DNA of 64,000 bases from Diplonema japonicum (GCA_964019335.1 OZ025732.1:62001-126000), one strand, 5' to 3'; shown: positions 4,928 to 63,446, counted from the first letter of the stretch. Translations and numbers: made by a program. Notes: generated by a model not told the origin, from the sequence alone.

Positions 4928-6268
4928 ATGAGCCTCACAGTGTTGATCAGGACTGTCGACGAGGATGTGGTGCACGAGGTGGAGCTGTCTGGGTTTGACA
5001 GGGTGAAGGACCTGTACAGGAAGGCGGCAGAGGCTTCTGCGGTGGAGGAGGGGATATTCCTCTTGCACTTCGAAGGTGTTGTCTTGGATAATGATGGGAC
5101 ATCTGGCGGTGGTGGGAAGGAGCAGGAGATACAGCAGCTTGGGATGGGGCAGGGGAGCGAGCTTCTCTTGTGCGGTATTAGTCATAATAAACCACTTGAT
5201 GTCAACGTCAGTCATGTGGAGCTCTGGAGTCGAAGAGAGGAGATTGCAAGGCTTCTTGAGGAGAATCCTGAGCTTTCTCTTGCGGTGGATGTCACTGGTC
5301 TGGACTGTCTTGATGTCAGGCTCACAAGCAAGCTTCCCTCAAAGCTTCGGCACCTCAAGGTGTGGTCCCTGGGCGGTGCGACCTCTATTGGGGACTCCTT
5401 TTTGTCTCGCTCCTCACTCGTCACCTTGGACCTGACGGCCTTGCAGGGTGTTCAGTCCGTTGGGCACTCTTTCCTCTGCGAGTGCAGATCCCTAACTACT
5501 GTTGATCTGTGTTCCCTCCGGAACTGGGTACCTGTCGGACATAAGTTCCTTGAAGGCTGTTCTTCATTGACTTCTGTTGATCTGAGTACTTTGCGGAATG
5601 TTCAGTCCATTGGGAACTGGTTTCTTTCGGATTGCAGCTCTCTGAAGACTGTTGATCTGAGCCCCCTTCGCAATGTCACCACCGTCGGCAGCGGTTTTCT
5701 CACTGGCCTCAAGTCGTTGGCTTCTGTTGACCTGAGTCCCTTGCAGAATGTGACCAGGATGAACCACTGTCATTTCATGTCTCATTGTGCTTCTTTAAGA
5801 TCTATCGATCTGAGCCCCCTGCACAACACCTTTCATAAATTCCGGGTGTACTATTTTCTCTACGGATGCAAAGCTCTAACGACTGTGGATCTGGGTCCTT
5901 TGTGGAACGTTCAGTCAGTTGGCGATGCTTTTCTCAACAGCTGCAAGTCTTTGAAAACAATTGATCTGAGCCCCCTTCGCAATGTCACCACTGTCGGCAG
6001 CTGTTTTCTTTCAGGGACCCCAGTGGCACACAGGAAAGATGTTCTGGAATTCCTCAGACTACGGGTACAGGAGCGAATAGAGCCAACAAGGTTCGTGGGC
6101 CCTGAGCAACTAGCACAACAAAAGGAGCAACCAGCAAAGCCAACAAGGTTCGTGGGCCCTGAGCTACCAGAACAACAAAAGGAGCAACCAACAAAGCCAA
6201 CAAGGTTCCGGGGCCCTCCTGTGAGGCAAACAACCTGTAAAAGTAAAGAGTGTTGCATCGTTTCCTGA
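4928..6268 (+). CDS. UBL + LRR protein (second subtype) with C-terminal CaaX box
   Basis: UBL N-terminus, LxTVDLSPLRNVxxVGxxFL repeats, 57-nt repeat at 6081-6215, ends CCIVS. Confidence 0.85.
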   Translation: MSLTVLIRTVDEDVVHEVELSGFDRVKDLYRKAAEASAVEEGIFLLHFEGVVLDNDGTSGGGGKEQEIQQLGMGQGSELLLCGISHNKPLDVNVSHVELWSRREEIARLLEENPELSLAVDVTGLDCLDVRLTSKLPSKLRHLKVWSLGGATSIGDSFLSRSSLVTLDLTALQGVQSVGHSFLCECRSLTTVDLCSLRNWVPVGHKFLEGCSSLTSVDLSTLRNVQSIGNWFLSDCSSLKTVDLSPLRNVTTVGSGFLTGLKSLASVDLSPLQNVTRMNHCHFMSHCASLRSIDLSPLHNTFHKFRVYYFLYGCKALTTVDLGPLWNVQSVGDAFLNSCKSLKTIDLSPLRNVTTVGSCFLSGTPVAHRKDVLEFLRLRVQERIEPTRFVGPEQLAQQKEQPAKPTRFVGPELPEQQKEQPTKPTRFRGPPVRQTTCKSKECCIVS

Positions 6269-7046
6269 TGACTTCACGGGGCAGGAAGAAGGCATCACGG
6301 GCTACCGTCACCCCTCCAACACCTACTTATCTAATAGTGCAATTTAAAAAGAAAGAAAGGAAAGTCCTACTTCTTCTTCTTTCTTTTCTTGTATCGTTGT
6401 CTTTTTCACTTTTCTCTCATTTCCTTTGTTCCTTTTTTTCCCATTCGTCCCCCTGCTGCCCCTTCCGCAAACCTAAACTACCCGTTCAACTTCCCCTCCT
6501 GTTTCTTACTATTTGGACGTTCCAAAACAGGGACCTCCTTTATCTCATCTCTACTATTTTCTTTCTTCTGCATAACATTGCAGTTCCCTGACCTGCTCAT
6601 ATACGTAAGAAAGCCCCCCCCCAAAAAAAACGAACTTATTCTCAGTAAACATTTTAGCCACCCCGATAACGTGATCTTGGGCAGGAAGTCCAGCCTCATT
6701 TTGGGGTGAGCCGCGGACGAGAGTCGTGATTGACGGGAGAGCCCGAACAAGGCGCACCACTGTGTCTCATGGTGTAGAGGAACAGACCAATCGTATTACA
6801 AAAAGCTACAGACAAGCGAGCAAAGTACGCGAGTGTCAATCCTGTGGGGGCTTTTTTACAATGAAGTTTCATCCGATCAAACGATTCTTCACGCACTCAA
6901 CCTCTCATGGGAACACGCACACGTCCCGCAGAGTTGGCGCAACCCAACAAAAACAGAGCACACCTCTGTAACCTAACTGAGAAGCTTTTGAAAACACGGA
7001 GACACGTTCTCTATGCACCTCCTACCCCCAACAACAGAAAATAAAA

Positions 7047-10173: not shown

Positions 10174-11236
10174 GGAAACACCCACTCTTCGGTTCCGAGG
10201 CCCCAAGAGGTGACGAGACTAGGACTCCAGGGAGGACCCCTCTCCTGCTCACCTACAACGGGCAGAGGAACAAACGCCCGGAACCCGAAGACGGCCCCGC
10301 CCTTCCCGCGGCCAAACGGGATCTCGCCGCGACGAGGCCGAACACCAGAGTCACTGGACTTGTCGCCCTTAAGAGGCTCACCAGGGAAGCAGACGTCGAC
10401 GGCCCTGAGGACCTGGATGAGCTTCGACACCTGGGCTTCCTTTCCCAGGGCGAGGCCGTCTTTGACCTCAGCTGCATGTCCAGGGCTTGCACACACTTCC
10501 TGGGTGAGACCCCCATGGTCACGGTCCCCCTCGACACACGCGTCGCGATCCCGTGTCTGCTGGTCTGTTATGACTCGACGTGGCTCTACGCTTCCCGCCA
10601 GGAACAGGGCTTTCGGTTGCAGACCCAAGGGTTCAAGGACAAGTCGTATCCGACTGTGGCAGCCCTACTCGCTGACTTCGTGGGGGCAGGGACCCTCTAC
10701 TACAGCGAGTCACAGTGGTCGACTGTGCTGAACTCCTACAACTAGGAACTACTGGAGACGACCCTACGCAATGTAGGAGTGCCGGCCCGGCGTGCTACGA
10801 GGGCGATAGGCTATGCAGGGTCTCACAGACCTCGCACCCTATGATTTTAGTTTCCACCTTTTCCTTTTCCACTTCTTGTCTTTTAACTTCCCTTCTGCTT
10901 TCCCAACATGGTTTCCGTCCCGGGTATGACGTTAAACTGCGTCCGCCGACGCATTTGGGTCAACATTCTCTGATGACCAAGCCGTCTTTCTCCGTTTCTT
11001 CTCCCCTTCTCTTTGTTATGTTATTTTCATTATTCTTTCTGGCGATAGACTGATACGGGCCATGGAAGCAACCTCTGCTTAATTCCTGGTACGTGGGAGG
11101 CTCCTCTTGAGGATGTCAGTCACCTTTTCCCTTTTTTACTCGACTCTCTGTTTTCGTATGCAGTATTTATTCTTTCCCACCCCTTTTTATCTATTTCTTC
11201 GCTTCTTCATCCTAACTTAACTTAAAACCATTTCAG
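10174..11236 (+). mobile_element. Fam-D 5'-truncated retroposon (ORF C-terminus to 10745 + structured 3' UTR ending CTAAC..TTTCAG)
   Basis: Homologous copies at 41469, 45193, 58393 and 62813 have ragged 5' ends and a common 3' end. Confidence 0.8.
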
Positions 11237-11519
11237 TTGCCCCCCCCCCCTCCTTTTTATCTTCTTCACTTTTCTTTCATATCCTTTTCCACTTTTTCCC
11301 ATTCGTCCCCTCCCCCACCCCCTTCACCTACCACCCACCACAGCACGAAGAAGGAAGAAAAAAAGTAGTATTTCATAAGAAGTTATCGGAATTTAGAAAA
11401 AAGAAGAATTGCGTCTCGTTTTTACACATATTTCCTCCTTTGCAAGATCACATTCAAAACACAGGGCTTGAGAGAGAAACGGAGCAGAAACACAACAACA
11501 AAACAAGAAAAAAAAGAAA

Positions 11520-12515
11520 ATGAACGATATGACAGTGTTCGTGAAGACGGGAGGCGGGGTTCACGATGTGGAAGTGTCGGGGAAGGAGACGGTGGGGATC
11601 CTGTACAAGAAGGCGGGGTGTGCTGCTGGTTTACTCGAAGGCAGGTTCAAACTGGTTTGGGAGGGTGAGGTCCTTGACAGGAATGGGGGTGAAGAGCTTC
11701 AGCAACTTGGGCTTGTGGAGGGCTGTGTGGTCCATGTGGAGAACAAGAGGAGAACCGTTCGTCTGGCAGAGCTGAAGGACGAGAACTCAGGAGTGGTTTC
11801 GGAGCTTGAGGGGCTTTTGTCAGCTGACCCTGAGCTTGTTCTGGTGGTGGAGGTGGGGAATATCGAAGTCTTGTCCATGCGCAAGAAACATCTTCCTTCT
11901 GGACTTCGGTTCCTCGTTGTCACCGACCCCACAGGCTGTGTTACAAGGATAGACGAAGCGTTTCTAAACAACTGCGACCACCTGACGTCTGCCGACCTCA
12001 TCCTCCCCAATGTTTCTACCATTGGCCATCAGTTTTTGATATCGTGCAAAAGATTAGAAACCATCGACTTGAATGCGATGACCAATCTTAATTCCATTGG
12101 TAATAGCTTCTTGTCAGGGTGCATACAAGTAGAAACCATCGACTTGAGTTCTATGGCAAATGTTTCTTCTATTTCTAATTTCTTTTTGTCTGGTTGGAAG
12201 AAACTAGAAACTATCGACTTGAGTGCGATGACCAATCTTGATTACATTGGGGATGGTTTCTTGTTTGGGTGCAGTAACTTAGAAACCATCGACTTGAGTG
12301 CGATGGCCAATCTTGATTACATTGGCTCTTACTTTTTGTCAAGGTGCGAAAAACTTGAAACCATCCACATGACTGCGATTACTCTTTCTTTCGTTGGTCA
12401 TTACTTCTTGGATAGGTGCGACAAACTAGAAACCATCGTTTTGAGAGGAGGCACTGATACTTTTAACAGGCTCATAAAGGCTCAGATCCCAACAGGGGTA
12501 AGTATACAGAAATAA
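11520..12515 (+). CDS. UBL + 25-aa LRR protein
   Basis: Paralog of 1639; ends with the same IVLRGGTDTFN..GVSIQK cap. Confidence 0.85.
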   Translation: MNDMTVFVKTGGGVHDVEVSGKETVGILYKKAGCAAGLLEGRFKLVWEGEVLDRNGGEELQQLGLVEGCVVHVENKRRTVRLAELKDENSGVVSELEGLLSADPELVLVVEVGNIEVLSMRKKHLPSGLRFLVVTDPTGCVTRIDEAFLNNCDHLTSADLILPNVSTIGHQFLISCKRLETIDLNAMTNLNSIGNSFLSGCIQVETIDLSSMANVSSISNFFLSGWKKLETIDLSAMTNLDYIGDGFLFGCSNLETIDLSAMANLDYIGSYFLSRCEKLETIHMTAITLSFVGHYFLDRCDKLETIVLRGGTDTFNRLIKAQIPTGVSIQK

Positions 12516-12601
12516 AAAGAAATTAAAAAAAAAAAGCAATTTTTTCTTTTCCTTTTTTATCTTTTTTTTTTTTTTTATGTTTCTCTTTTTTTTTATAAAA
12601 A

Positions 12602-12932
12602 AGGTGGTGGGGATAACATAGAAATATAAGAAGTACATCAGATGTGTTGTTCGCTGTTGACCTCCTCGTCGGTCATCACCGGTAGCGCCCCGAGTGGAAG
12701 ATCATAAAGCAGATGCTCAGGGTGACGAACAGGCAGCAAACTGCACGAGCGCAGAATCTTGGTTACCCGGAACGCCCCTGCTAGGGTTGAGCACACCGCA
12801 CGCATTAAGGACACGACGCGGAACGCAGAAGAAGCTACTGCTCGGCCGAGGAGCGCCCCCTGTAATCAAGTAGGTAGTTCGTGCTTCGTTGCACGCTTAA
12901 TGCCACCTAGTGTTGCAATCAAAGCCCCATTT
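12602..12932 (+). repeat. Fam-E short interspersed repeat
   Basis: Copies or fragments at 1219-1295, 9879-9985 (inverted), 19051-19335, 19411-19467, 25501-25698 and 26560-26718. Confidence 0.85.
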
Positions 12933-13267
12933 TCTTTTTTTTTTGCTTGAAACAAAAAAAGCAAACACTGTAAGTGAATTGTTTGTAAAAAGAAGAGCTT
13001 CGGCCTTGCTGCAAGGCTGCAAAGGCAGCAAGCTAGCCAGCAAGTAGGACGTAACGCAGCTTGCCCGGCTTTCCCGTTTTTATTCGACTCTCTGTTTTCG
13101 TATGCACTAAATATCCTTTCTTCTTCACCTGTTTTTTTACTTTTTCGCTTTTTATTCCCACTTGCAAATATCATTTGAGTTGCGCACCAATCCCTGTCCC
13201 CTTTTTAATTTAATTTTCGTATTTGCTTCATCAACAATATTCAAAGCTGAAGAAAGAAAACACAAAC

Positions 13268-13978
13268 ATGAGCCTCGCAGTGTTGATCAGGACTGTCGAC
13301 GAGGATGTGGTGCACGAGGTGGAGCTGGAGAACACGAAGACCTTACGCAAGTAAGAGTGCTGGCCCGGCGAGCTACGAGGGCAAAAAACCTCATTTCTCC
13401 TTGGAGATGAGAACATATATTATAGTGCGACATGATCAGACTGGAACGGCCGCCCCGGGGCATCCTCTGCTCAACCCGGCGGACGTGGGAGGCCCTTCTT
13501 CGGAAGGTGCCAGTCGCTTGATCAGTGTCGTCGAATGCGCGCTATATTTTATATTTTATAAGTACATATAACAATCGATTGAAAGAAGAAGAACGTTTAC
13601 CAAGAGGTGGAGCTGTCTGGGTTTGACAGGGTGAAGGACCTGTACAGGAAGGCGGCAGAGGCTTCTGCGGTGGAGGAGGGGATGTTCCTCTTGCACTTCG
13701 AAGGTGTTGTCTTGGATAATGATGGGACATCTGGCGGTGGTGGGAAGGAGCAGGAGATACAGCAACTTGGGATGGGGCAGGGGAGCGAGCTTCTCTTGTG
13801 CGGTATTCATAATAAACCACTTGATGTCAGTCATGTGGAGCTCTGGAGTCGAAGAGAGGAGATTGCAAGGCTTCTTGAGGAGAATCCTGAGCTTTCTCTT
13901 GCGGTGGATGTCACTGGTCTGGACTGTCTTGATGTCAGGCTCACAAGCAAGCTTCCCTCAAAGCTTCGGCACCTCAAG
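13268..13978 (+). pseudogene. Copy of the 4928-type UBL-LRR gene, interrupted by Fam-C and 3'-truncated
   Basis: Near-identical to 4928-5359 apart from the insertion. Confidence 0.85.
13328..13603 (+). mobile_element. Fam-C retroposon 3' fragment with 12-bp target-site duplication GAGGTGGAGCTG
   Basis: TSD at 13316-13327 and 13604-13615; the empty site is visible in the paralog at ~4976-4987. Confidence 0.9.
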
Positions 13979-14240
13979 GGGGTTATTGTGGGGGACTATT
14001 TTTTTTAACGCAAGAAGCTAGATGGTTCGTGATGAACGGTTCAAAATTTCACGGAACTACTTAGTTCGAAGGCGCTTTGTGGGTGGCCCGGGTGCTTCTG
14101 CGTTGCCGGAAGGGCACGTGGATTCATGTGTTGACAACTTATCCAGTATTTGCTTTCTTTCATGGCCCGCAATGTCAATATTCCATTCCTGAGCAAGATC
14201 CCAAAGCTGTGCCGTAGCCCACTGGGTATTGTGAGGCTGC

Positions 14241-14505
14241 TTTACGCAAGTAAGAGTGCTGGCCCGGCGAGCTACGAGGGAAAAAAACCCCATTTTCTTC
14301 TAGAAGATGAGAAATATGTTATAGTGCGACATGATCAGACTGGAACGGCCGCCCCAGGGCATCCTCTGCTCAACCCGGCGGACGTGGGAGGCCCTTCTTC
14401 GGAAGGTGCCAGTCGCTTGATCAGTGTCGTCGAATGCGCGCTATATTTTATAAGTACATAAAACAATGGAATTTAAAAAAAAAAAAAAAAATCGATTGAA
14501 AAGGA
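14241..14505 (+). mobile_element. Fam-C retroposon 3' fragment
   Basis: Matches ~13342-13585. Confidence 0.85.
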
Positions 14506-15295
14506 AAAGTATTTGAGTGTGGCACCGGCGATTCAGACCTCCCGTCATTTTGAGGGGTTAGGGAGGGCTGTGGCATGCCCCAAGCAGCCGAGGCGGGACG
14601 TTGATTGATGACTGCAGCAGAGCGCCGAATCAACGTGGCACTGTGGGTAGGGCAGGCACATGAAAAAGGTCATGCAACTGCTCGGCACCTTTAGCTGTAT
14701 GCGGACCATACAGCTGAGGGCACTTAGCAAAGTAAGCACTTTGAAGGGGTCGGACCCTTTAGGTTGTTGCGGGTGTTCCAATGGACACTACACCTGACGA
14801 GACTCCAGCAGCCTCCCAAGCCCTTGCAGCTTCTCAAGCCCCGACAGCTTCCCAAGCCTCTCAGACCCCCGCAACCTCCCAGCAACCACCTAACGCCAAA
14901 ACCAGGCGGTTTGTTTGCAACGTTTGTAGGTTCTCCACAGCCTGGGAGAAAAACTGTTAAAATTTCTAGGCATGAAAATCTTGGCACGATTTGGCATGTT
15001 AAGATTTCCGAAGTGCTCTAAGCCCCGCTCCCTGCTTTCCATGTGGCAGGCCCCCCTGCCCAAATAAGTACAACTCAAGTAAGTGTATTCCAAATAATTC
15101 TTTTTTTTTTGGAGCCCAAACACCCCCCCCCTCCACTGCCCAAATAAAGGGATTATTCGGACTTTACTTTTTTTTTTTTTTCCTTCATAAATCCAATAAG
15201 TTTTTTTTTTAATTTTTTTTAATATTTTTTTTTAGATAAAAATAATAAAAAAAGAATTAACAGGTTTTTTTTACCCCCCCCAAAAAAATATAAAT

Positions 15296-35563: not shown

Positions 35564-38500
35564 ATGTCCGTCAGGGACCTGCTGGGGCTGCTTGGGCTGG
35601 TCGAAACAAACCCTGGCCCACCCAAGAAGCTGCCGCCCCCGTCGCCTAAGGGTCTCAAGGTTGTCTCGTGGAACTGCAACGGCCTCGTTGCGAAATGGAC
35701 CGTCGTATCTCGCCATGCTGACTTCTTGTCGCTGGACATCATCATGATACAGGAGACGCACCTGAGGGAAGGGCACGACACGCCACACCTGCCTGGGTAC
35801 AGGTCATACAGGAGGGATCGGTTGACACCGGTGACTGACGGCACTGCGACGAGGGGTGGTGGTATTGTCACGTATGTCCGCGACGATCTTGCCTCGGAGG
35901 AGGTTCCGCACGTACTCCCGGCTGGGGACTGTGTCACTGAGAGACTGGATGTGAGGATCTCCTGCGAGAAGCGTGAGCCGATCACTCTCTCCAACGTTTA
36001 CCTTACACCGGTAAGCGCGAGCAGAGGCACGAGGGACCCTGAGTACCTGCGGCCTGGCAGCCTTCCCATGGGGAAGAACACAGTCATAGCGGGTGACTTC
36101 AATGCTCATCACAGCTCCTGGGACGCCACGGTGACGACGCCGAACGAGAGGGGGAACGTGGTCAGGGACTGGCTGGACACCCACGGGTACACCGTCTACA
36201 ACGACCGCAACGAACCGACGAGGGACTCGTCACGACACGTTCTGGACCTGGTTGTGGGGCGCTGCGCGAAGCTTGAGCCGAAGACGCTGGGCACGTGGGG
36301 CTCCGATCATAGTCCCGTATCCTTTCACCTGCCTCTTGAGGACGTCTACCGTTCGGAGCGCCCCTTCCCCACCTGGAATTTTAAAAAAGCCAGATGGGAT
36401 GACTACACTGCTGCTGTTGCCCGCCTGCTTGCTGGTGTTGACACGGCGGCTCCGATTGACTCTGTCACGAAGGGGTTTACACAAGCCCTTTTGACTGCGG
36501 CGAACGACCACATTCCCCTCTGTGGGATGCGACGTGGCCCGACCCCCTGGTGGACTGCTGAGCTCGAGGACGCCTTCGAAGAGCGGAACACCCTGCGCGA
36601 ACTCCTGCTTCAAGAGGCGGACGTGGTGGAGGAGTACAGGGCGAAGGTGAAGGAAGTCAACCGACTCCTTGACGAGACGAAGCGTGAGGCATGGGGAAGG
36701 ATGGCGGCCGACCTCAGCCGGAGCAAGGACCTCGGGGCTGCGTTCAGAGCGGTGAAGAAGCTGGACGGCAGGCACCGAAAGACACACCTTCCTGTACTCG
36801 AGGGAAGATTTGTGTCGGACAAGGCGAAGGCCGACCGGCTGGGGGCGCACTTCGCTAAGCTCTACGGCAGGCGTGGTGACGGGAACTCGAAGGACGCCGC
36901 TCCTTCTGCAAGCAGACTCGGGTGTCAAGCGTTCACCGTGGACGACCTCACCCGCGGCCTGAGAAGGATGAAGACGCGCAGCGCGGCCGGGGAAGACGGA
37001 ATCTTCTCGGAGATGCTCCTACACCTGAACACGGACTCTCTCGGTGTCCTCCTTCTACTCCTCAATCGCTCCTGGCTGATGGGTGTCGTCCCCGGTGCCT
37101 GGAAGAAGGGAGTGATCGTCCCGGTACCGAAACCTGGAAAAGATGCGACTCTCTTGGCTTCCTACCGGCCGATCTGCCTGACCAGCTGCCTCTGCAAGCT
37201 GCTGGAGAGGATGATCGAGGAGAGGCTCACGTTTCTTCTTGACGCGGACGGGACGGGAGTCGAGGGACTCCACGACAGCCAGGCTGGTTTCAGACGCGGC
37301 CGCTCCACGGAGGAGCAGGTGGCAACCCTCACTGAGTGCATGTCGAGGAACAAAGACGATCGACGTCTCTCGGCCGCTCTGCTGTTCGACTTCTCTTCTG
37401 CCTTCGACCTGGTGCCCCATGGTGCCCTGCTGGACAAGATGCGAGGGAAGGGTCTCCCCGAACCCTTCGTGGAGTGGACGCGGTCCTTTCTATGCGGCCG
37501 TACTGCTGCGGTCACGATTGGACGGTCGAGGGGGTCGACGACGAAGGTGCGACGGGGTGTCCCCCAGGGCTCTGTCTTGGGTCCCATCCTGTACACCATC
37601 TACGTCGACGAACTCGCCAGGAGACTGGAGGGACTGGCGGACGTCTCGGTGCTCTACGCCGACGACGTGGCGGTTGTGATCTCCTCTGGACAAGGGGACG
37701 TGGCTGGGCTGGAGCGGAAGGCGCAGGCAGTGGTGGATGCGGTTGAGGACTGGTGCAGGGAGCGTGACATGCTGCTGAGCACGTCCAAGACGCAGGCAGT
37801 CTGCGTCCCCCCCCAGAAACGTCTCGGGGTCTACTTCACTTCGTCACGAGTCCCCCTTCAGCCAGGTGCCTTCCAGAACCCGCTCTTCGGCCTGGGGGTG
37901 AACGCCGATGGCACGATCTCCGGGGACCAGGAGCTGGCGGGCCTTCAGGTTGTGGAGGCGGGTGGTGTGCGGATCCGCTGCGTGCGGGACATGCATGCAG
38001 CCGTGCGACGGCCCGACGTGGACTACGTTGCGGCCCGTCCCCTGCCTCTGTCTGAACACGCGAGGTACCTTGGGGTTACGGTGGACTCTGGGCTCACGTT
38101 CGGTGAACACGCACAGGACATCCTACGGCGGGCCAGCAAAAGGCTGAGGGTGCTGAAGCTCTTGTCCGGCACGTCCTGGGGCAGCAAGAGGGACACTCTG
38201 CGGTCTCTCTACGTTACGTACATCCTCCCGCTGCTGCGCTACTGCATGGGGGTCTACTACAGCAGGCTCGATGATGTCGGGAGGAAGGACCTGGCTGGGC
38301 TTCACCAGGAGGCGGCGGTGCTGATCACGGGCTGCTGGAGTGGCTCCGGAGGGTACAAGCTCCTAGCTGAGGCAGGACTGCTTCCCCTCGAAAGAATGGC
38401 GGAGGGTGCTGCGGCGACGATGACGGCGAAGGCCTTCTGCTGGCAGTCTTCCCCGGTTCACAGGGAGACGGTCAAGCTGAAGCAGGCGAACAGGCTGGGG

Positions 38501-39712
38501 TGTGGGTGGCTGCGCTCTGGCTACCAAGCACTGCGTCGATGCGGGTTGGAACCAAAGGTGCACTTCGAGTACCTGTCGGCTACGCCCCTGGCGGCCCCGT
38601 GGCAGACAGGCATGGTCGACTTCAGGACTGACCTCCCCGGCGGGGTCACGCGATCGTCGCCAGACGCGGACAGGCGGAAGGCGGCCGAGGCTGCTCTTGC
38701 GGCTCTCCCCCCGGGCATCCATGCCTACACGGATGGCTCGGTTGTACAGGTCGGACAGAAGGCGAAAGGTGGCTCTGGGGTTTATCTACAGCTGCCTCCC
38801 CCCCTGACCCCTGTGTCTGTGTGCCATGGCGTCAACGACTTCTGTTCATCTTTTCGGGCAGAGGGCATGGCTGTGAAAACGGCGCTGGATATGGTGGCTA
38901 CCCTCCGAAAAACACACCCTTCGCTGGCGAAGTCCCCGCTGTCGATCTGCACCGACTCCCTCTCCCTCGTCGAGCAGCTGCGAGCTGGCCCAACGCGACA
39001 GAGGGAGAAGCTCGACCACCAGACGTGGAGCCGGCTGGTGACCGCGGCGCGCACGCAGGGGACACCGGTGGTCCTCCAGTTTGTGCCCTCCCACTGTGGG
39101 GTGGACGGGAACGAGAAGGCTGACGCTCTGGCCGGGGAGGGAACGAAGCGGAAGCAGGACAGGCCCTCCCTTGACTACCGATCAGTGAGGGCCCTGGTGC
39201 GACGGTGGGTGGTGCGGAGGTCCACGGAGCTCATAACATCCCTCGCCCACAACTACGCGGTGGCGACCGAGCTTCGGTCTGCGCACTTCCCCCTTGGCTT
39301 CCCCAGACAAGCTGAAACGGTCATCTCGCGGCTGCGGATTGGTCACTCGGCTCTCTTCTTCGGCTTCCTGCAGACTGCTGGCCCGAACAGGAAGCACAAG
39401 GGTGTGCTCCGGTGCCCAGCCTGCCACGCAGCACCGATGTCCAGGGAGCATGTTGTCGGTGGGTGCCCTGTGATCGGGAGGGGGGCGATCGACACTCCTG
39501 CTGGTACTCCCTCCCTAGCGTTCTCCCTGTCGAGACGCGTGACCCAGATCTACGACCTCATTGTTGAGTCTGGCCTGCTCGCCTGGTCACGCTCCGGACT
39601 GTTCACCTCGCCATCATCCCTGGCGTCTACAGACGTCACTGCACCTTCAAACGTGCCGCCTCCTCCTCCGGTCTCTCTTGACGCCGGTCCCGCGGCCCCC
39701 GTGCTGCGCTAA
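35564..39712 (+). CDS. Ingi-1 ORF2: 2A-like motif, AP endonuclease, reverse transcriptase, RNase H, zinc knuckle
   Basis: VETNPGP; SWNCNG/QETH/GDFNAHH/SDH; GVPQGSVLGP/YADD/RYLG; YTDGS/PSHCGVDGNEKAD; CPAC..H..CP. Confidence 0.96.
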   Translation: MSVRDLLGLLGLVETNPGPPKKLPPPSPKGLKVVSWNCNGLVAKWTVVSRHADFLSLDIIMIQETHLREGHDTPHLPGYRSYRRDRLTPVTDGTATRGGGIVTYVRDDLASEEVPHVLPAGDCVTERLDVRISCEKREPITLSNVYLTPVSASRGTRDPEYLRPGSLPMGKNTVIAGDFNAHHSSWDATVTTPNERGNVVRDWLDTHGYTVYNDRNEPTRDSSRHVLDLVVGRCAKLEPKTLGTWGSDHSPVSFHLPLEDVYRSERPFPTWNFKKARWDDYTAAVARLLAGVDTAAPIDSVTKGFTQALLTAANDHIPLCGMRRGPTPWWTAELEDAFEERNTLRELLLQEADVVEEYRAKVKEVNRLLDETKREAWGRMAADLSRSKDLGAAFRAVKKLDGRHRKTHLPVLEGRFVSDKAKADRLGAHFAKLYGRRGDGNSKDAAPSASRLGCQAFTVDDLTRGLRRMKTRSAAGEDGIFSEMLLHLNTDSLGVLLLLLNRSWLMGVVPGAWKKGVIVPVPKPGKDATLLASYRPICLTSCLCKLLERMIEERLTFLLDADGTGVEGLHDSQAGFRRGRSTEEQVATLTECMSRNKDDRRLSAALLFDFSSAFDLVPHGALLDKMRGKGLPEPFVEWTRSFLCGRTAAVTIGRSRGSTTKVRRGVPQGSVLGPILYTIYVDELARRLEGLADVSVLYADDVAVVISSGQGDVAGLERKAQAVVDAVEDWCRERDMLLSTSKTQAVCVPPQKRLGVYFTSSRVPLQPGAFQNPLFGLGVNADGTISGDQELAGLQVVEAGGVRIRCVRDMHAAVRRPDVDYVAARPLPLSEHARYLGVTVDSGLTFGEHAQDILRRASKRLRVLKLLSGTSWGSKRDTLRSLYVTYILPLLRYCMGVYYSRLDDVGRKDLAGLHQEAAVLITGCWSGSGGYKLLAEAGLLPLERMAEGAAATMTAKAFCWQSSPVHRETVKLKQANRLGCGWLRSGYQALRRCGLEPKVHFEYLSATPLAAPWQTGMVDFRTDLPGGVTRSSPDADRRKAAEAALAALPPGIHAYTDGSVVQVGQKAKGGSGVYLQLPPPLTPVSVCHGVNDFCSSFRAEGMAVKTALDMVATLRKTHPSLAKSPLSICTDSLSLVEQLRAGPTRQREKLDHQTWSRLVTAARTQGTPVVLQFVPSHCGVDGNEKADALAGEGTKRKQDRPSLDYRSVRALVRRWVVRRSTELITSLAHNYAVATELRSAHFPLGFPRQAETVISRLRIGHSALFFGFLQTAGPNRKHKGVLRCPACHAAPMSREHVVGGCPVIGRGAIDTPAGTPSLAFSLSRRVTQIYDLIVESGLLAWSRSGLFTSPSSLASTDVTAPSNVPPPPPVSLDAGPAAPVLR

Positions 39713-40565
39713 GGGATCGCCCCGTGTGTGTGTGTTAAATGGAATGTTGTGTTTCCCACTTTCCTTTCCCTTCCCTTCCTTTCCCTTCCCTTCCCTTCCT
39801 TTCCCTTCCTTCTCCTTCCTCTCACTGTTTCCCATTTCCCCTTTTATTTCACACTCACCAATGATTCGCTCAATAGGAGCAATACCTCCCTGGGGGGCTT
39901 TCCGCCGGAGGTTCCAGCCAAAGAAGGACATCCAGCTGGAAGGTAGGCCCCCGTTTTTCTCTCACTTGACTGAGGGAATAATGTAATTCAGCCCTCTTCG
40001 GCTGTCCCAAAGCAGAGCACGGGTTGGTGGGGGACCAGGGCTCCTCCTGCTTGCAGAAGCCTGGTCCTTTGCCCTCCCTATTTCCCCATGGTTTCCCTTC
40101 ACCTTTTTTTTTCCCTTTTCTCAGGTGTTGCTCTCCATGGCGGCCCTGCATTGGTATTTTGAAAAAAAAAAAAAAAAAAAAAAAAAGAAAACACGGAAAA
40201 GGAATCACCTAAGTGGTTACCACACAGGCCCCTTGTTTTGGAAACCCCGGTTCGAATCTGGGAATCTCACTTTTTACGTCACTCAAGGATCTGGTCGCCT
40301 CTCAACAGAAGGGGAGAGAGGTGGGCTTGGCAAGCCAGCAGCGGTGACAGCTGCTAGTGGGGCAACCTCAGCAACCCAGGCAGCAGCCCCACAGGTCCAG
40401 ACCGAGGTCCTGTCAGCACCCATGGACGCACAGCCCGCACCACACAGGAGATGCCTTGACAATCAATATCAACCATAAGCACCCCCAATAAGATTTGTAA
40501 CTTGTAACTTGTAACCTGTAATACCCCACCCTTTCAAATCTGACTGACGTTAAATAAAACAACGG

Positions 40566-45194: not shown

Positions 45195-45963
45195 TTGCAT
45201 GTCCAGGGCGTGCACTCACTTCTTGGGTGAGGCCCCCCTGGTCGCGGTCCCCCTCGACACACGGGTTGCGATCCCGTGCCTACTGGTCTGTCACGGCTCG
45301 ACGTGGCACTACGCATCCCGCCAGGAACAGGGCTTTCTGCTGCAAACCCAAGGGTTCGGGGACAAGTCCTACTCGACCGTGGCAGCCCTGCTCGCTGACT
45401 TTGTAGGGGCCGGGACCCTCTATTACAACGAATCGCAGTGGTCGACTGTCCTGCATTCCTACAACTAGGAACAATCGGAAACAACCCTACACAATGTAGG
45501 AGTGCCGGCCCGGCGTGCTACGAGGGCGATAGGCTATGCAAGGTTTCACAGACCTCGCACCCTATTATTTAGTTTCCACCCTTTCCGTTTTCTTTCCAAT
45601 TTTTAAGCTTGTTATTACCCTTTCTGCTTTTTCCTTTTCCTACATGTTTTCGGTCCCGGGTATGACGTTAAACTGCGTCCGCCGACGCGTCTGAACCAGC
45701 ACTTCCTGGCGACCAGGCCGTCTTTTCCCTTTTCCTACTTCACTTCGTTCCGCTATTTTCATTATTCTTTCCGGCGATAGACTGATACGGGCCATGGAAG
45801 CAACCTCTGCTTAATTCCTGGTACGTGGGAGGCTCCTCTTGAGGATGTCAGTCACCTTTTCCCTTTTTTATTCGACTCTCTGTTTTCGTATGCAGTATTT
45901 ATTCTTTTCCACCCCTTTTTATCTGTTTCTTCGCTTCTTCATCCTAACTTAAAACCATTTCAG
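45193..45963 (+). mobile_element. Fam-D copy ending TTTCAG inside a UBL-ankyrin gene
   Basis: Followed directly by CCACCTCTGAGACC of the UBL coding sequence. Confidence 0.88.
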
Positions 45964-56543: not shown

Positions 56544-57859
56544 GCGCGAAGCGCGGGCAGTTGTGCGACGGACAAGCGGAACCCGCAAAGAAGAAAGACC
56601 GCTTGGACCTCCTCAGGGCGAACCGACGGTCGGGCAAGGCCGCCGTTCACGCCCTGGCTGAAGAACATCGAGCGGGTCTGGAAGATAAGCTCTCCCACAC
56701 GAAACTGGCGACGGCCGGGATCGTCGAAGCGGAAGGGGAGTGGACGCCAGAAGCCATGATACGGGTCTGCAAACACGTCCTCGGCGAAGAGCCTAAAACC
56801 GCGAAGGAACTCGGGATTCACATGAAGTTTGTCCGGTTCGCCCTCATCCTGGACTTTGACAAGACGTGGATCATGGCCAGGTATGACTCGGAAGGCTGGA
56901 AGGCGAAGGGGGACGTCGAGAGACGGCAGCAGTTCACGCGGCACGGAGATATGAGAGCCTTGAAGGATCACTACTTCGTGGCCACTGACTGGCTGTTCTT
57001 CACCACGAGAACATATATTATAGTGCGACATGATCAGACTGGAACGTCACCATGAGAACATATATTATAGTGCGACATGATCAGACTGGAACGTCACCAT
57101 GAGAACATATATTATAGTGCGACATGATCAGACTGGAACGTCACCATGAGAACATATATTATAGTGCGACATGATCAGACTGGAACGTCACCATGAGAAC
57201 ATATATTATAGTGCGACATGATCAGACTGGAACGTCACCATGAGAACATATATTATAGTGCGACATGATCAGACTGGAACGTCACCATGAGAACATATAT
57301 TATAGTGCGACATGATCAGACTGGAACGTCACCATGAGAACATATATTATAGTGCGACATGATCAGACTGGAACGTCACCATGAGAACATATATTATAGT
57401 GCGACATGATCAGACTGGAACGTCACCATGAGAACATATATTATAGTGCGACATGATCAGACTGGAACGTCACCATGAGAACATATATTATAGTGCGACA
57501 TGATCAGACTGGAACGTCACCATGAGAACATATATTATAGTGCGACATGATCAGACTGGAACGTCACCATGAGAACATATATTATAGTGCGACATGATCA
57601 GACTGGAACGTCACCATGAGAACATATATTATAGTGCGACATGATCAGACTGGAACGTCACCATGAGAACATATATTATAGTGCGACATGATCAGACTGG
57701 AACGGCCGCCCCGGGGCATCCTCTGCTCAACCCGGCGGACGTGGGAGGCCCTTCTTCGGAAGGTGCCAGTCGCTTGATCAGTGTCGTCGAATGCGCGCTA
57801 TATTTTACATTTTATAAGTACATATAACAATCGATTGAAAGAAGAAGAACGTTTACCAA
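56544..57859 (+). mobile_element. Fam-C retroposon (ORF C-terminus + 3' UTR with internal 47-bp amplification)
   Basis: 3' part matches 13409-13603; ORF homologous to the Fam-D ORF. Confidence 0.8.
57000..57704 (+). repeat. 47-bp tandem repeat x15 (TCACCATGAGAACATATATTATAGTGCGACATGATCAGACTGGAACG)
   Basis: 705 bp = 15 x 47; no spacers; the first unit has one mismatch. Confidence 0.97.
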
Positions 57860-58392: not shown

Positions 58393-59032
58393 AGGAACAG
58401 GGCTTTCTGCTGCAAACCCAAGGGTTCGGGGACAAGTCCTACTCGACCGTGGCAGCCCTGCTCGCTGAATTTGTAGGGGCCGGGACCCTCTATTACAACG
58501 AATCGCAGTGGTCGACTGTCCTGCATTCCTACAACTAGGAACAATCGGAAACAACCCTACACAATGTAGGAGTGCCGGCCCGGCGTGCTACGAGGGCGAT
58601 AGGCTATGCAAGGTTTCACAGACCTCGCACCCTATTATTTAGTTTCCACCCTTTCCATTTTCTTTCCAATTTTAAACTTGTTTTTACCCTTTCTTCTTTT
58701 TCCTTTTCCTACATGTTTTCGGTCCCGGGTATGACGTTAAACTGCGTCCGCCGACGCGTCTGAACCAGCACTTCCTGGCGACCAGGCCGTCTTTTCTCTT
58801 TTCCTTTTTCACTTCGTTCCGTTATTTTCATTATTCTTTCCGGTGATAGACTGATACGGGCCATGGAAGCAACCTCTGCTTAATTCCTGGTACGTGGGAG
58901 GCTCCTCTTGAGGATGTCAGTCACCTTTTTCCTTTTTTATTCGACTCTCTGTTTTCGTATGCAGTATTTATTCTTTTCCACCCCTTTTTATCTATTTCTT
59001 CGCTTCTTCATCCTAACTTAAAACCATTTCAG
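58393..59032 (+). mobile_element. Fam-D copy ending TTTCAG
   Basis: Matches 45323-45963. Confidence 0.88.
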
Positions 59033-62812: not shown

Positions 62813-63446
62813 AGGGCTTTCTGCTGCAAACCCAAGGGTTCGGGGACAAGTCCTACTCGACCGTGGCAGCCCTGCTCGCTGACTTAGTAGGGGCCGGGAC
62901 CCTCTATTACAACGAGTCGCAGTGGTCGACTGTCCTGCATTCCTACAACTAGGAACAATCGGAAACAACCCTACACAATGTAGGAGTGCCGGCCCGGCGT
63001 GCTACGAGGGCGATAGGCTATGCAAGGTTTCACAGACCTCGCACCCTATTATTTAGTTTCCACCCTTTCCATTTTCTTTCCAATTTTAAACTTGTTTTTA
63101 CCCTTTCTTCTTTTTCCTTTTCCTACATGTTTTCGGTCCCGGGTATGACGTTAAACTGCGTCCGCCGACGCGTCTGAACCAGCACTTCCTGGCGACCAGG
63201 CCGTCTTTTCTCTTTTCCTTTTTCACTTCGTTCCGTTATTTTCATTATTCTTTCCGGTGATAGACTGATACGGGCCATGGAAGCAACCTCTGCTTAATTC
63301 CTGGTACGTGGGAGGCTCCTCTTGAGGATGTCAGTCACCTTTTTCCTTTTTTATTCGACTCTCTGTTTTCGTATGCAGTATTTATTCTTTTTCACCCCTT
63401 TTTATCTATTTTTTCGCTTCTCTATTCTAACTTAAAATCATTTCAG
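62813..63446 (+). mobile_element. Fam-D copy inserted after the 5' end (62750-62812) of a UBL-ankyrin gene
   Basis: Left flank CCACCTCTGAGACC; ends TTTCAG followed by CCACCT. Confidence 0.88.

What the first reader, a model, noticed from the sequence alone, without database searches (positions are those of the whole stretch)
11041..11124. Covarying pseudoknotted RNA motif shared by two diverged retroposon families (ribozyme-like candidate)
Seen: Fam-D (11048-11121, also ~45780, ~58848, ~63263) and Fam-C (13439-13515, also ~14337, ~57695) have otherwise dissimilar 3' UTRs but share one architecture with compensatory changes. The closing stem is GACTGA/TCAGTC vs GACTGG/CCAGTC, followed by ACG/CGT and then GCCA/TGGT vs CCGCC/GGCGG. 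The apical hairpin is AAGCA-ACCTC-TGCTT vs GGGCA-TCCTC-TGCTC. An invariant ACGTGGGAGGC linker has a GAGG that can pair with the loop CCTC (pseudoknot). The last hairpin is TCCTC-TT-GAGGA vs CCTTC-TTCG-GAAGG. I cannot fit it to hammerhead, HDV, twister or pistol consensus. Inference: an undescribed functional RNA, such as a self-cleaving ribozyme, an RT-recruitment element or a stability element for a tailless RNA.
Basis: partly seen in the sequence, partly recalled or inferred. Interest (0 to 1): 0.9.

Follow-up and report, generated by a model that had tools for sequence, protein, structure and literature searches.

The report
Conserved 3'UTR RNA fold of Penelope-like retroelements
A 74-77-base RNA fold, kept by paired compensating changes, sits in the 3' untranslated region of two old families of Penelope-like retroelements that lack the hammerhead ribozyme usual for such elements; it matches no described RNA family, its function is untested, and it most likely marks the element's RNA for its own reverse transcriptase.

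Summary
The motif occurs 7 times in the window, all on the + strand: Fam-D at 11048-11121, 45780, 58849 and 63263; Fam-C at 13439-13515, 14338 and 57695. The 62.5-Mb genome has at least 216 copies.

Fam-D and Fam-C share 53 of 77 columns. All 16 differences in paired columns form 8 double compensatory changes. None of the 24 pairs is broken (97% of cells paired, against about 42% with slid partners). The CCUC/GAGG pseudoknot never varies, so it is untested.

Rfam gives no hit even at E<=10, and there is no hammerhead core.

The hosts are not short retroposons. They are about 7-kb Penelope-like elements with an N-terminal GIY-YIG nuclease, an RT with RYIDDFLL, a Josephin-like domain and a long C-terminal extension. 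This permuted Naiad/Chlamys type is reported to lack canonical hammerheads.

Within each family the motif is invariant while its flanks diverge, in subfamilies D1/D2 and C1/C3 and in contigs of three other coded organisms.

- Best reading (about 0.45): a cis-acting three-way-junction RNA that recruits or positions the element's RT.
- New self-cleaving ribozyme: about 0.15.
- mRNA processing or stability element: about 0.15.

No tool here could test catalysis or binding. The scan's index lists this same stretch once more (s1-865586), not other DNA.

The parts
11048..11121 (+). Motif, Fam-D copy (the finding). P1 is 11048-11053/11116-11121. J is 11054. P2 is ACG 11055-11057 / CGT 11092-11094, with G11058 opposite A11091. 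P2b is 11059-11062/11087-11090. U11063 is a bulge. P3 is 11064-11067/11083-11086. P4 is 11068-11070/11076-11078 with loop ACCTC 11071-11075. The 3' bulge TTAA is 11079-11082. The invariant linker GGGAGGC is 11095-11101. P5 is 11102-11106/11109-11113 with loop TT. TG is 11114-11115.
   Evidence: (91.3 bits)
45780..45853 (+). Motif, Fam-D copy in the D2 subfamily. The element is about 85% identical to D1; the motif is identical.
58849..58922 (+). Motif, Fam-D copy (D2 subfamily)
63263..63336 (+). Motif, Fam-D copy (D2 subfamily)
13439..13515 (+). Motif, Fam-C copy
   Evidence: 104.4 bits
14338..14414 (+). Motif, Fam-C copy with one G>A change in the inner arm
57695..57771 (+). Motif, Fam-C copy, preceded by a 47-bp tandem array
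10174..11236 (+). 5'-truncated Fam-D element. It holds the end of the long ORF (stop TAG at 10743-10745) and a 491-nt 3'UTR that ends ...CATTTCAG.
13328..13603 (+). 5'-truncated Fam-C insertion (276 bp) inside a paralogue of the LRR gene at 4928-6268. It is flanked by the 12-bp target duplication GAGGTGGAGCTG (13316-13327 and 13604-13615).
10757..10804 (+). Second island shared by Fam-D and Fam-C just after the stop codon (matches 13336-13382 at 87.5%). It is also conserved between D1 and D2.

Best explanation
The motif is a cis-acting structured RNA in the 3'UTR of permuted-domain Penelope-like elements (N-terminal GIY-YIG nuclease, then RT).

The fold: a 6-bp closing helix carries two arms. 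One is a long bulged arm capped by a 3-bp hairpin with loop NCCUC. The other is a 5-bp hairpin. The arms are joined by invariant junction nucleotides (ACG...A-CGU-GGGAGGC...UG).

Proposed mechanism (inferred, not shown): the element's telomerase-related RT, or its ribonucleoprotein, binds this junction. That selects the element's own RNA and positions reverse transcription at the nearby 3' end during target-primed insertion. This would parallel the RNA protein-binding motif and internal stem-loop initiation site mapped in vitro for the Poseidon PLE of Anolis, and the 3'UTR recognition by R2 and stringent LINEs.

Shown: the structure, its conservation, and the type of host element. Inferred: binding and the role in priming.
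For: 1. Structure under selection.
- Fam-D and Fam-C have RTs only about 49% identical and otherwise unalignable UTRs.
- They keep 53 of 77 motif columns. All 16 stem differences are 8 double compensatory changes.
- Junction and loop bases are invariant.

2. Sequence under selection within families.
- D1 vs D2: 0 differences across 11044-11128, against 15% in the ORF and up to 59% elsewhere in the UTR.
- C3 keeps the C1 motif although its flanks have diverged.
- In contigs of three other coded organisms, the listed substitutions stop at 11044 and resume at 11122.

3. The host is a retroelement that copies from its 3' end.
- 5' truncation points vary while the 3' end is fixed.
- A Fam-C copy has a 12-bp target duplication.
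- GIY-YIG hits over the Pfam cut-off lie about 2.1 kb upstream of the RT on the same strand in 9 Fam-D copies, within open frames of up to 2175 aa.
- RT motifs GIPMGGNASPDLANL and CRYIDDFLLW are present.
- The homologue P0002 has weak sub-cut-off GIY-YIG and RVT_1 matches and a clear UCH domain.

4. Literature.
- PLE RT needs an RNA motif and initiates inside a stem-loop, and the hammerhead is dispensable in vitro (PMC11167929).
- Naiad/Chlamys PLEs lack canonical hammerheads (PMC8557442).

5. Position. The motif lies at a similar distance from the 3' end in both families (115 nt in Fam-D, 88 nt in the window's Fam-C copy), although the tails themselves are unrelated.
Against: - No binding or retrotransposition data exist.
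- The motif is 88-115 nt from the genomic 3' end, not at it.
- Only two deep lineages carry it, so the covariation rests on one Fam-D/Fam-C comparison.
- Strict invariance of even helical bases (GACUG/CAGUC, ACG/CGU, GCA/UGC) is more than a simple protein-binding hairpin usually shows. It would also fit a catalytic or tertiary-folded RNA.
- I found no trans-mobilised non-autonomous family that keeps only this module. The apparent one (C2) is a nested dead copy.
Confidence: 0.45

Rival explanations
1. A new class of self-cleaving ribozyme. It would take the place that the hammerhead holds near the 3' end or pseudo-LTR of canonical Penelope-like elements, perhaps protein-assisted as in the Anolis element.
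For: - Canonical PLEs carry a hammerhead in this region, while permuted PLEs lack it (PMC8557442). These UTRs have no CUGANGA...GAAA core.
- The conservation pattern is ribozyme-like: invariant junction and loop bases, covarying peripheral stems, and a possible loop-to-junction tertiary pair.
- Local pieces recall the HDV core: a 3-bp hairpin with loop UCCUC, GG after a helix strand, then a hairpin. This is by inspection and from my own memory of HDV.
Against: - No Rfam ribozyme family matches even at E<=10 on the isolated motif.
- The helix order is fully nested, not the HDV double pseudoknot. The junction sequence is not that of a hammerhead.
- No RNA ends could be seen, because only contigs were served.
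- The 5' ends of truncated copies do not pile up at one site in the motif.
- The hammerhead is not needed for PLE insertion in vitro (PMC11167929), so no replacement is required.
Confidence: 0.15
2. An mRNA-level element of the retroelement transcript. It could define or protect a 3' end in polycistronic transcripts (exonuclease block, polyadenylation-site context) or control export or translation.
For: - All large ORFs in the window lie on one strand, which fits polycistronic transcription.
- The Fam-D tail after the motif is a pyrimidine tract ending in AG.
- Contigs of runs guessed to be RNA stop matching at 11121 and 11127, the 3' edge of the motif.
- A three-way junction with a loop-junction pair is the general architecture of exonuclease-resistant RNAs (my own knowledge).
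Against: - The runs are only guessed to be RNA, and contigs cannot show RNA ends.
- The break at 11121 is equally explained by Fam-D-into-Fam-D insertions at CAG|TCACC.
- There is no match to Rfam xrRNA, SECIS or other UTR families.
- Genomic copies include the tail, so the template RNA extends past the motif.
Confidence: 0.15
3. A DNA-level or cDNA-level signal. Either the site is recognised by the element's own nuclease for homing into existing copies (pseudo-LTR formation), or it is a fold of the minus-strand cDNA used for second-strand priming.
For: - Tail-only Fam-D copies start exactly at TCACC (11120) directly after another copy's terminal CAG, in at least 2 independent places.
- The internal ...GTCAG|TCACC mimics the terminal ...TTCAG|NNRCC junction, which is seen in 21 of 21 copies.
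- Penelope nuclease is reported to recognise its own tail region (PMC11167929).
Against: - Compensatory changes preserve pairing, not sequence. That argues for a single-stranded fold rather than duplex DNA recognition.
- One G-U pair in Fam-D (11059-11090) fits the + strand RNA only.
- Fam-C has no NNRCC directly after its closing helix.
Confidence: 0.1
4. No function of its own: shared ancestry or module exchange between the two families, with conservation by hitch-hiking.
For: Most copies are near-identical recent insertions, so copy number alone says nothing.
Against: - Twenty-four of 77 columns differ between Fam-D and Fam-C, yet every stem difference is compensated (about 4e-4 by a crude 0.375^8 estimate).
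- There are zero changes in 85 nt between D1 and D2, against 15% or more around it (about 1e-6).
Confidence: 0.05

Closest known systems
Hammerhead ribozyme of canonical Penelope-like elements (type I, in the pseudo-LTR / near the 3' end)
   Same: Same kind of host element and the same region of it. Both are small three-helix junctions with invariant junction bases and covarying stems.
   Different: There is no CUGANGA/GAAA core and no hit to any Rfam hammerhead model. The junction strands are U|A, GGGAGGC and UG. Cleavage is not shown.
RNA protein-binding motif and stem-loop RT-initiation site of the Poseidon PLE of Anolis (Frangieh et al. 2024, PMC11167929)
   Same: Both are structured RNA near the copied end of a PLE template. 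In that system initiation is internal to the RNA 3' end. This is the functional analogy behind my best explanation.
   Different: That element has a C-terminal nuclease and an AC-rich stem-loop inside the ORF start/pLTR junction. No sequence or fold similarity was tested or is apparent. Binding is not shown here.
3'UTR recognition structures of R2 and stringent-type LINEs/SINEs (my own knowledge)
   Same: A cis-acting folded 3'UTR is kept by covariation between families whose sequences otherwise diverge, and it is used to select the template for target-primed reverse transcription.
   Different: The RT clade differs (LINE, not PLE/TERT-like). Here sequence conservation is much stricter, and the motif is 88-115 nt from the end.
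HDV-like ribozymes of retrotransposons (R2, RTE, L1Tc)
   Same: Local features match: a 3-bp hairpin with a UCCUC-type loop, GG following a helix strand that could pair with loop CC, then a hairpin.
   Different: Here the helix order is fully nested (outer helix, arm, hairpin), not P1-P2-P3-P1'-P4-P2'. The HDV-like ribozymes sit at element 5' ends. Rfam gives no hit.
Telomerase RNA three-way junction (CR4/5, TWJ) bound by TERT (my own knowledge)
   Same: Both are three-way junction RNAs. PLE RT is the sister group of TERT (PMC8557442).
   Different: There is no sequence or detailed structural correspondence, and none was tested. This is only a lead.

Membership tests
Hammerhead ribozyme | Conserved core CUGANGA ... 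GAAA ... UH at a three-helix junction | tested here: not met
   The pattern CTGANGA-N7-30-GAAA gives 5 hits in the window against 7.6 expected by chance, and none lies in a Fam-C or Fam-D UTR. The junction strands are U|A, GGGAGGC and UG.
Hammerhead ribozyme | Match to Rfam hammerhead covariance models | tested here: not met
   No match at gathering score over the window. None at E<=10 on 10700-14700 or on the isolated motifs.
HDV-like ribozyme | Nested double pseudoknot with strand order P1-P2-P3-P3'-P1'-P4-P4'-P2' | tested here: not met
   The covariation-supported helices are fully nested. The outer helix 5' strand lies before, not after, the P1-like strand. Rfam gives no hit.
Twister, twister-sister, pistol, hatchet, hairpin, VS, hovlinc ribozymes | Match to the family covariance model | tested here: not met
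   Nothing from any Rfam family at E<=10 on 131- and 136-nt stretches holding the motif.
Any self-cleaving ribozyme | Site-specific self-cleavage | not testable with these tools
   Only contigs were served, and they cannot show RNA ends.
Penelope-like element, permuted (Naiad/Chlamys) type (host element) | GIY-YIG endonuclease N-terminal to the RT in one ORF | tested here: met
   PF01541 hits of 24.7 bits (cut-off 22.6) lie about 2.1 kb upstream, on the same strand, of the RT segment in 9 Fam-D copies, within open frames of up to 2175 aa.
Penelope-like element, permuted (Naiad/Chlamys) type (host element) | PLE/TERT-type RT (phylogenetic placement; motif C RYxDD) | tested here: inconclusive
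   CRYIDDFLLW and GIPMGGNASPDLANL are present, and RVT_1 matches only weakly. The homologue P0002 has only weak sub-cut-off GIY-YIG and RVT_1 matches plus a clear UCH domain. No tree was built, and the first half of the RT was not retrievable.
Penelope-like element, permuted (Naiad/Chlamys) type (host element) | 5' truncation, partial tandem / inverted copies, microsatellite or (C)n insertion bias, no canonical hammerhead | tested here: met
   Variable 5' ends. Tail-to-tail inverted pair around (C)20 in L042 and tandem tails. A poly-C flank follows the window copy. No hammerhead core.
Penelope-like element, permuted (Naiad/Chlamys) type (host element) | CxC linker motif between nuclease and RT | not tested
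Retrotransposon 3'UTR RT-recognition element (R2 / stringent LINE type) | Structured RNA in the 3'UTR conserved by covariation between related families | tested here: met
Retrotransposon 3'UTR RT-recognition element (R2 / stringent LINE type) | Specific binding by the element's RT and requirement for reverse transcription | not testable with these tools
   This needs biochemistry.

The most novel reading that the evidence does not exclude
The motif is a previously unknown class of small self-cleaving (possibly protein-assisted) ribozyme that replaced the hammerhead in permuted-domain Penelope-like elements. A second novel reading that is also not excluded: it is a telomerase-RNA-like three-way junction that tethers a TERT-related RT to its template.
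Probability: 0.15. Interest if true: 0.85.

Novelty: new variant of a known kind. Interest (0 to 1): 0.55.

Why it matters
Penelope-like elements are the closest relatives of telomerase, and how their RT picks and primes its RNA is barely known. The permuted Naiad/Chlamys clade is very successful yet lacks the hammerhead of other PLEs.

A compact, strictly conserved and covarying RNA in the 3'UTR gives a defined handle of about 75 nt. It can be used to test RNA recognition by a TERT-like RT, or to look for a hammerhead substitute.

The host genome has same-strand gene arrays and an ingi/L1Tc-like LINE. If it is a kinetoplastid, PLEs would be a fifth retroelement clade there, where only four are listed (PMC12278014). 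I did not establish the organism.

Tried and rejected
- **Known RNA family:** Rfam gathering scan of the window and E<=10 scans of the region and of each isolated motif found nothing.
- **Hammerhead core scan:** nothing in the UTRs.
- **More diverged families in the genome:**
  - The covariance model's 150 scored hits are all Fam-C or Fam-D.
  - A pattern that excludes Fam-C and Fam-D gave only 2 unrelated hits.
  - The four hits from a mistyped 12-N pattern (L001-L004) are unrelated sequence.
- **Relatives in metagenomes:** The 80 listed loci were scored with the model and none matched at E<=1, so they look like chance hits.
- **'Fam-D is a 1.06-kb unit':** wrong. That was the truncation point of the window copy.
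- **'The ORF is a LINE RT tail':** no similarity to the window's APE-RT-RNase H LINE.
- **'C2 shows two compensatory events':** rejected as evidence. C2 is one insertion with a 17-bp target duplication inside another repeat, amplified passively. All five of its motif changes are CpG transitions, which keep pairing 3 times in 4 by chance.
- **'A non-autonomous family keeps only this module':** rejected for the same reason.
- **SECIS and xrRNA readings:** no Rfam support.
- **C-terminal protein domain shared by Fam-C and Fam-D:** no Pfam hit and no usable Atlas hit.
- **PDB sequence search of the homologue P0002:** only its USP domain matched.
- I therefore could not read the N-terminal half of the elements or more copies.

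Full report
**1. The observation**

The 11-mer ACGTGGGAGGC occurs seven times exactly in the window, all on the + strand, where 0.71 matches are expected. An alignment of the seven sites with flanks shows two sequence types. Fam-D is at 11048-11121, 45780, 58849 and 63263. Fam-C is at 13439-13515, 14338 and 57695. The two types align only across the motif.

A covariance model (R1, 77 positions, 23 pairs) run without filters over the window finds exactly these seven copies (91-104 bits). Nothing else scores above 10.3 bits.

In the whole assembly (62.5 Mb, 132 contigs; the window is C85:62001-126000) the pattern CCTCTGCT-N11-ACGTGGGAGGC has 216 matches on both strands. The reversed control has none.

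**2. The structure**

Fam-D and Fam-C (C1) are identical in 53 of 77 columns. Of the 24 pairs in my final drawing, none is broken in either family. All 16 differences that fall in paired columns form 8 double compensatory changes, and there is no one-sided change.

On an 8-sequence alignment:
- 97.2% of cells pair, against 39-45% when partners are slid by 1-3 columns.
- 0 of 500 shuffles reach the observed covariation score.
- RNAalifold predicts almost the same fold on its own.

RNAalifold differs in one place. It offers GGC of the linker pairing with G-Y-C in place of the last two pairs of the closing helix.

The fold has these parts:
- a closing helix GACUGR/YCAGUC;
- an arm made of ACG/CGU, a G-A opposition and two covarying helices separated by a 5' bulge;
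- a 3' bulge UYAA and a 3-bp cap GCA/UGC with loop NCCUC;
- an invariant linker GGGAGGC;
- a covarying 5-bp hairpin, then UG.

The proposed CCUC/GAGG pseudoknot never varies, so nothing speaks for or against it. A 5-nt loop pairing with 4 bases would be strained, so 2-3 pairs seem more realistic (inference). Single-sequence energies are ordinary (z -0.14 and +0.20).

**3. A caveat on covariation inside Fam-C**

The C2 variant carries two apparently compensated pairs. C2 is one Fam-C copy inserted into another repeat, with a 17-bp target duplication GTATTGTGAGGCTGCTT. It was then amplified along with that repeat.

All five of its motif changes are CpG transitions. Facing CpGs stay paired in three of the four possible outcomes, so I do not count C2 as evidence. 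The case for the fold rests on the Fam-D/Fam-C comparison.

**4. Conservation within families**

- D1 and D2 differ by about 15% in the ORF and by up to 59% in parts of the UTR. They have no difference at all across 11044-11128.
- A third Fam-C subfamily (C3) has different flanks but the C1 motif.
- Contigs of four public runs from four coded organisms were laid on 10700-13650. The listed substitutions stop at 11044 and start again at 11122.
- For the most distant organism (run X4, 13 differences over 10999-11173), at least 10 differences lie outside the 74-nt motif.
- The Fam-C motif is covered without substitutions in two organisms.
- That table shows only the best-supported differences, so 'none inside' is not proven.

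**5. What carries the motif**

The hosts are not short retroposons. Copies of both families have variable 5' ends and a fixed 3' end.

The window's Fam-C copy (13328-13603) interrupts a paralogue of the LRR gene at 4928-6268 and has a 12-bp target duplication.

Walking upstream in Fam-D showed one long open frame. It contains:
- RT motifs GIPMGGNASPDLANL and CRYIDDFLLW;
- a Josephin-like Cys/His pair (ECGWAVINW ... GHWFIALRK), read by eye against my memory of ataxin-3;
- a long low-complexity stretch;
- a C-terminal domain of about 100 aa shared with Fam-C at about 25% identity.

The RT parts of Fam-C and Fam-D are about 49% identical.

The Pfam GIY-YIG model hits nine places over its cut-off (24.7 bits). 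Each lies about 2.1 kb upstream of a Fam-D RT segment on the same strand, in open frames of up to 2175 aa. A database homologue has weak sub-cut-off GIY-YIG and RVT_1 matches and a clear ubiquitin hydrolase (UCH) domain.

This is the permuted Penelope-like architecture described as Naiad/Chlamys. One Chlamys family is reported to carry a Josephin-like extension. The clade shows (C)n insertion bias and 'lacks canonical hammerhead ribozyme motifs' (PMC8557442).

Matching details here:
- ...CATTTCAG|NNRCC in 21 of 21 Fam-D ends;
- poly-C flanks;
- a tail-to-tail inverted pair around (C)20;
- tandem tails.

The RT was not placed in a tree and the CxC motif was not read.

**6. Known RNA families**

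Rfam gives nothing at gathering score over the window. It gives nothing at E<=10 over 10700-14700 or over each isolated motif. The hammerhead core pattern is absent from these UTRs.

The helix order is nested, so it is not an HDV-type double pseudoknot, although the cap hairpin, the UCCUC loop and the following GG recall that core.

The 80 listed loci were scored with the model and none passed, so they look like chance matches.

**7. Mechanism**

For a canonical PLE, purified protein needs an RNA motif and starts reverse transcription inside a stem-loop, internal to the RNA 3' end. The hammerhead is dispensable in vitro (PMC11167929).

I therefore take the motif most likely (0.45) to be the RNA handle by which the Fam-C and Fam-D RT recognises its template and is positioned for priming 88-115 nt downstream.

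One detail fits the 'two start sites flanking a tail' picture of PLEs. The motif ends ...GUCAG|UCACC, which mimics the terminal ...UUCAG|NNRCC. Tail-only copies beginning exactly at TCACC follow the terminal CAG of another copy in at least two independent places. Contigs of two organisms stop matching at 11121 and 11127. These same facts also fit Fam-D inserting into Fam-D at that site.

Rivals:
- a new ribozyme replacing the hammerhead (0.15);
- an mRNA end-forming or protective element (0.15);
- a DNA or cDNA-level signal (0.10);
- no function (0.05).

No run kept as raw reads was available, so RNA ends could not be examined.

**8. Verdict**

This is a real, selectively maintained and undescribed RNA structure. 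Its host elements are reclassified as permuted Penelope-like elements. Its function is inferred, not shown.

Noticed in passing
window 57000-57704: There are fifteen tandem copies of a 47-bp chimeric unit (99% matches). The unit joins TCACCA from the Fam-C ORF (...TTCTTCACCAC) to the UTR stretch GAGAAC...GACTGGAACG. It ends after the first 10 bases of the motif and deletes the ORF end. GACTGG occurs at both joined sites.
   Followed up: partly
window 11229-11241 and loci L035-L046, L005-L034: Fam-D copies end ...CATTTCAG followed by NNRCC in 21 of 21 cases. Flanks are often poly-C. L042 holds two copies tail-to-tail around (C)20. The same CAG|TCACC occurs inside the element at the 3' edge of the motif (11117-11124), and tail-only copies start there (G000:C85:163633, 60484, 47679).
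   Followed up: partly
loci L007, L009, L013-L017, L019-L024, L027-L029, L065, L068, L076: The C2 form of the motif belongs to one Fam-C insertion with a 17-bp target duplication (GTATTGTGAGGCTGCTT) inside another repeat, which then spread. All five motif differences from C1 are CpG transitions. The two CpGs of the invariant ACG/CGU helix are the only ones left intact.
   Followed up: partly
window 10757-10804 and 13336-13382: A second island shared by Fam-D and Fam-C lies right after the stop codon (GAGTGCYGGCCCGGCGWGCTACGAGGGC, 87.5% identical). It differs by only 3-5% between D1 and D2. It may be a further RNA element. Its structure was not analysed.
   Followed up: no
window 35564-40188: A separate, apparently intact LINE has an APE endonuclease-RT-RNase H ORF of 1382 aa and a poly(A) tail at 40161-40188 (ingi/L1Tc-like architecture). 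It does not carry the motif.
   Followed up: partly
G000:C52:208264-208386 (-) and eight similar places: Fam-D appears to encode a single ORF of about 2000-2175 aa: GIY-YIG, RT, a Josephin-like Cys/His domain, a long low-complexity region and a conserved C-terminal domain without Pfam or Atlas match. Its copies are 99-100% identical, so it was recently active.
   Followed up: partly
locus L078, reverse strand, about 6407-6620 of the reverse complement: Upstream of a truncated Fam-C copy, an open frame reads ...CPLKRKRYGIKIYCLNCVSTGCLSRFRVHATK..., which to my eye resembles a piggyBac-type transposase segment. No Pfam hit was found at E<=0.01.
   Followed up: no
window 12581-12976: In the laid contigs, depth is far higher here than in the neighbouring bins in all four runs (about 100-fold and over in X1 and X3, modest in X4). 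Many joints and loose ends also fall here, which suggests a very abundant repeat or RNA unrelated to the motif.
   Followed up: no
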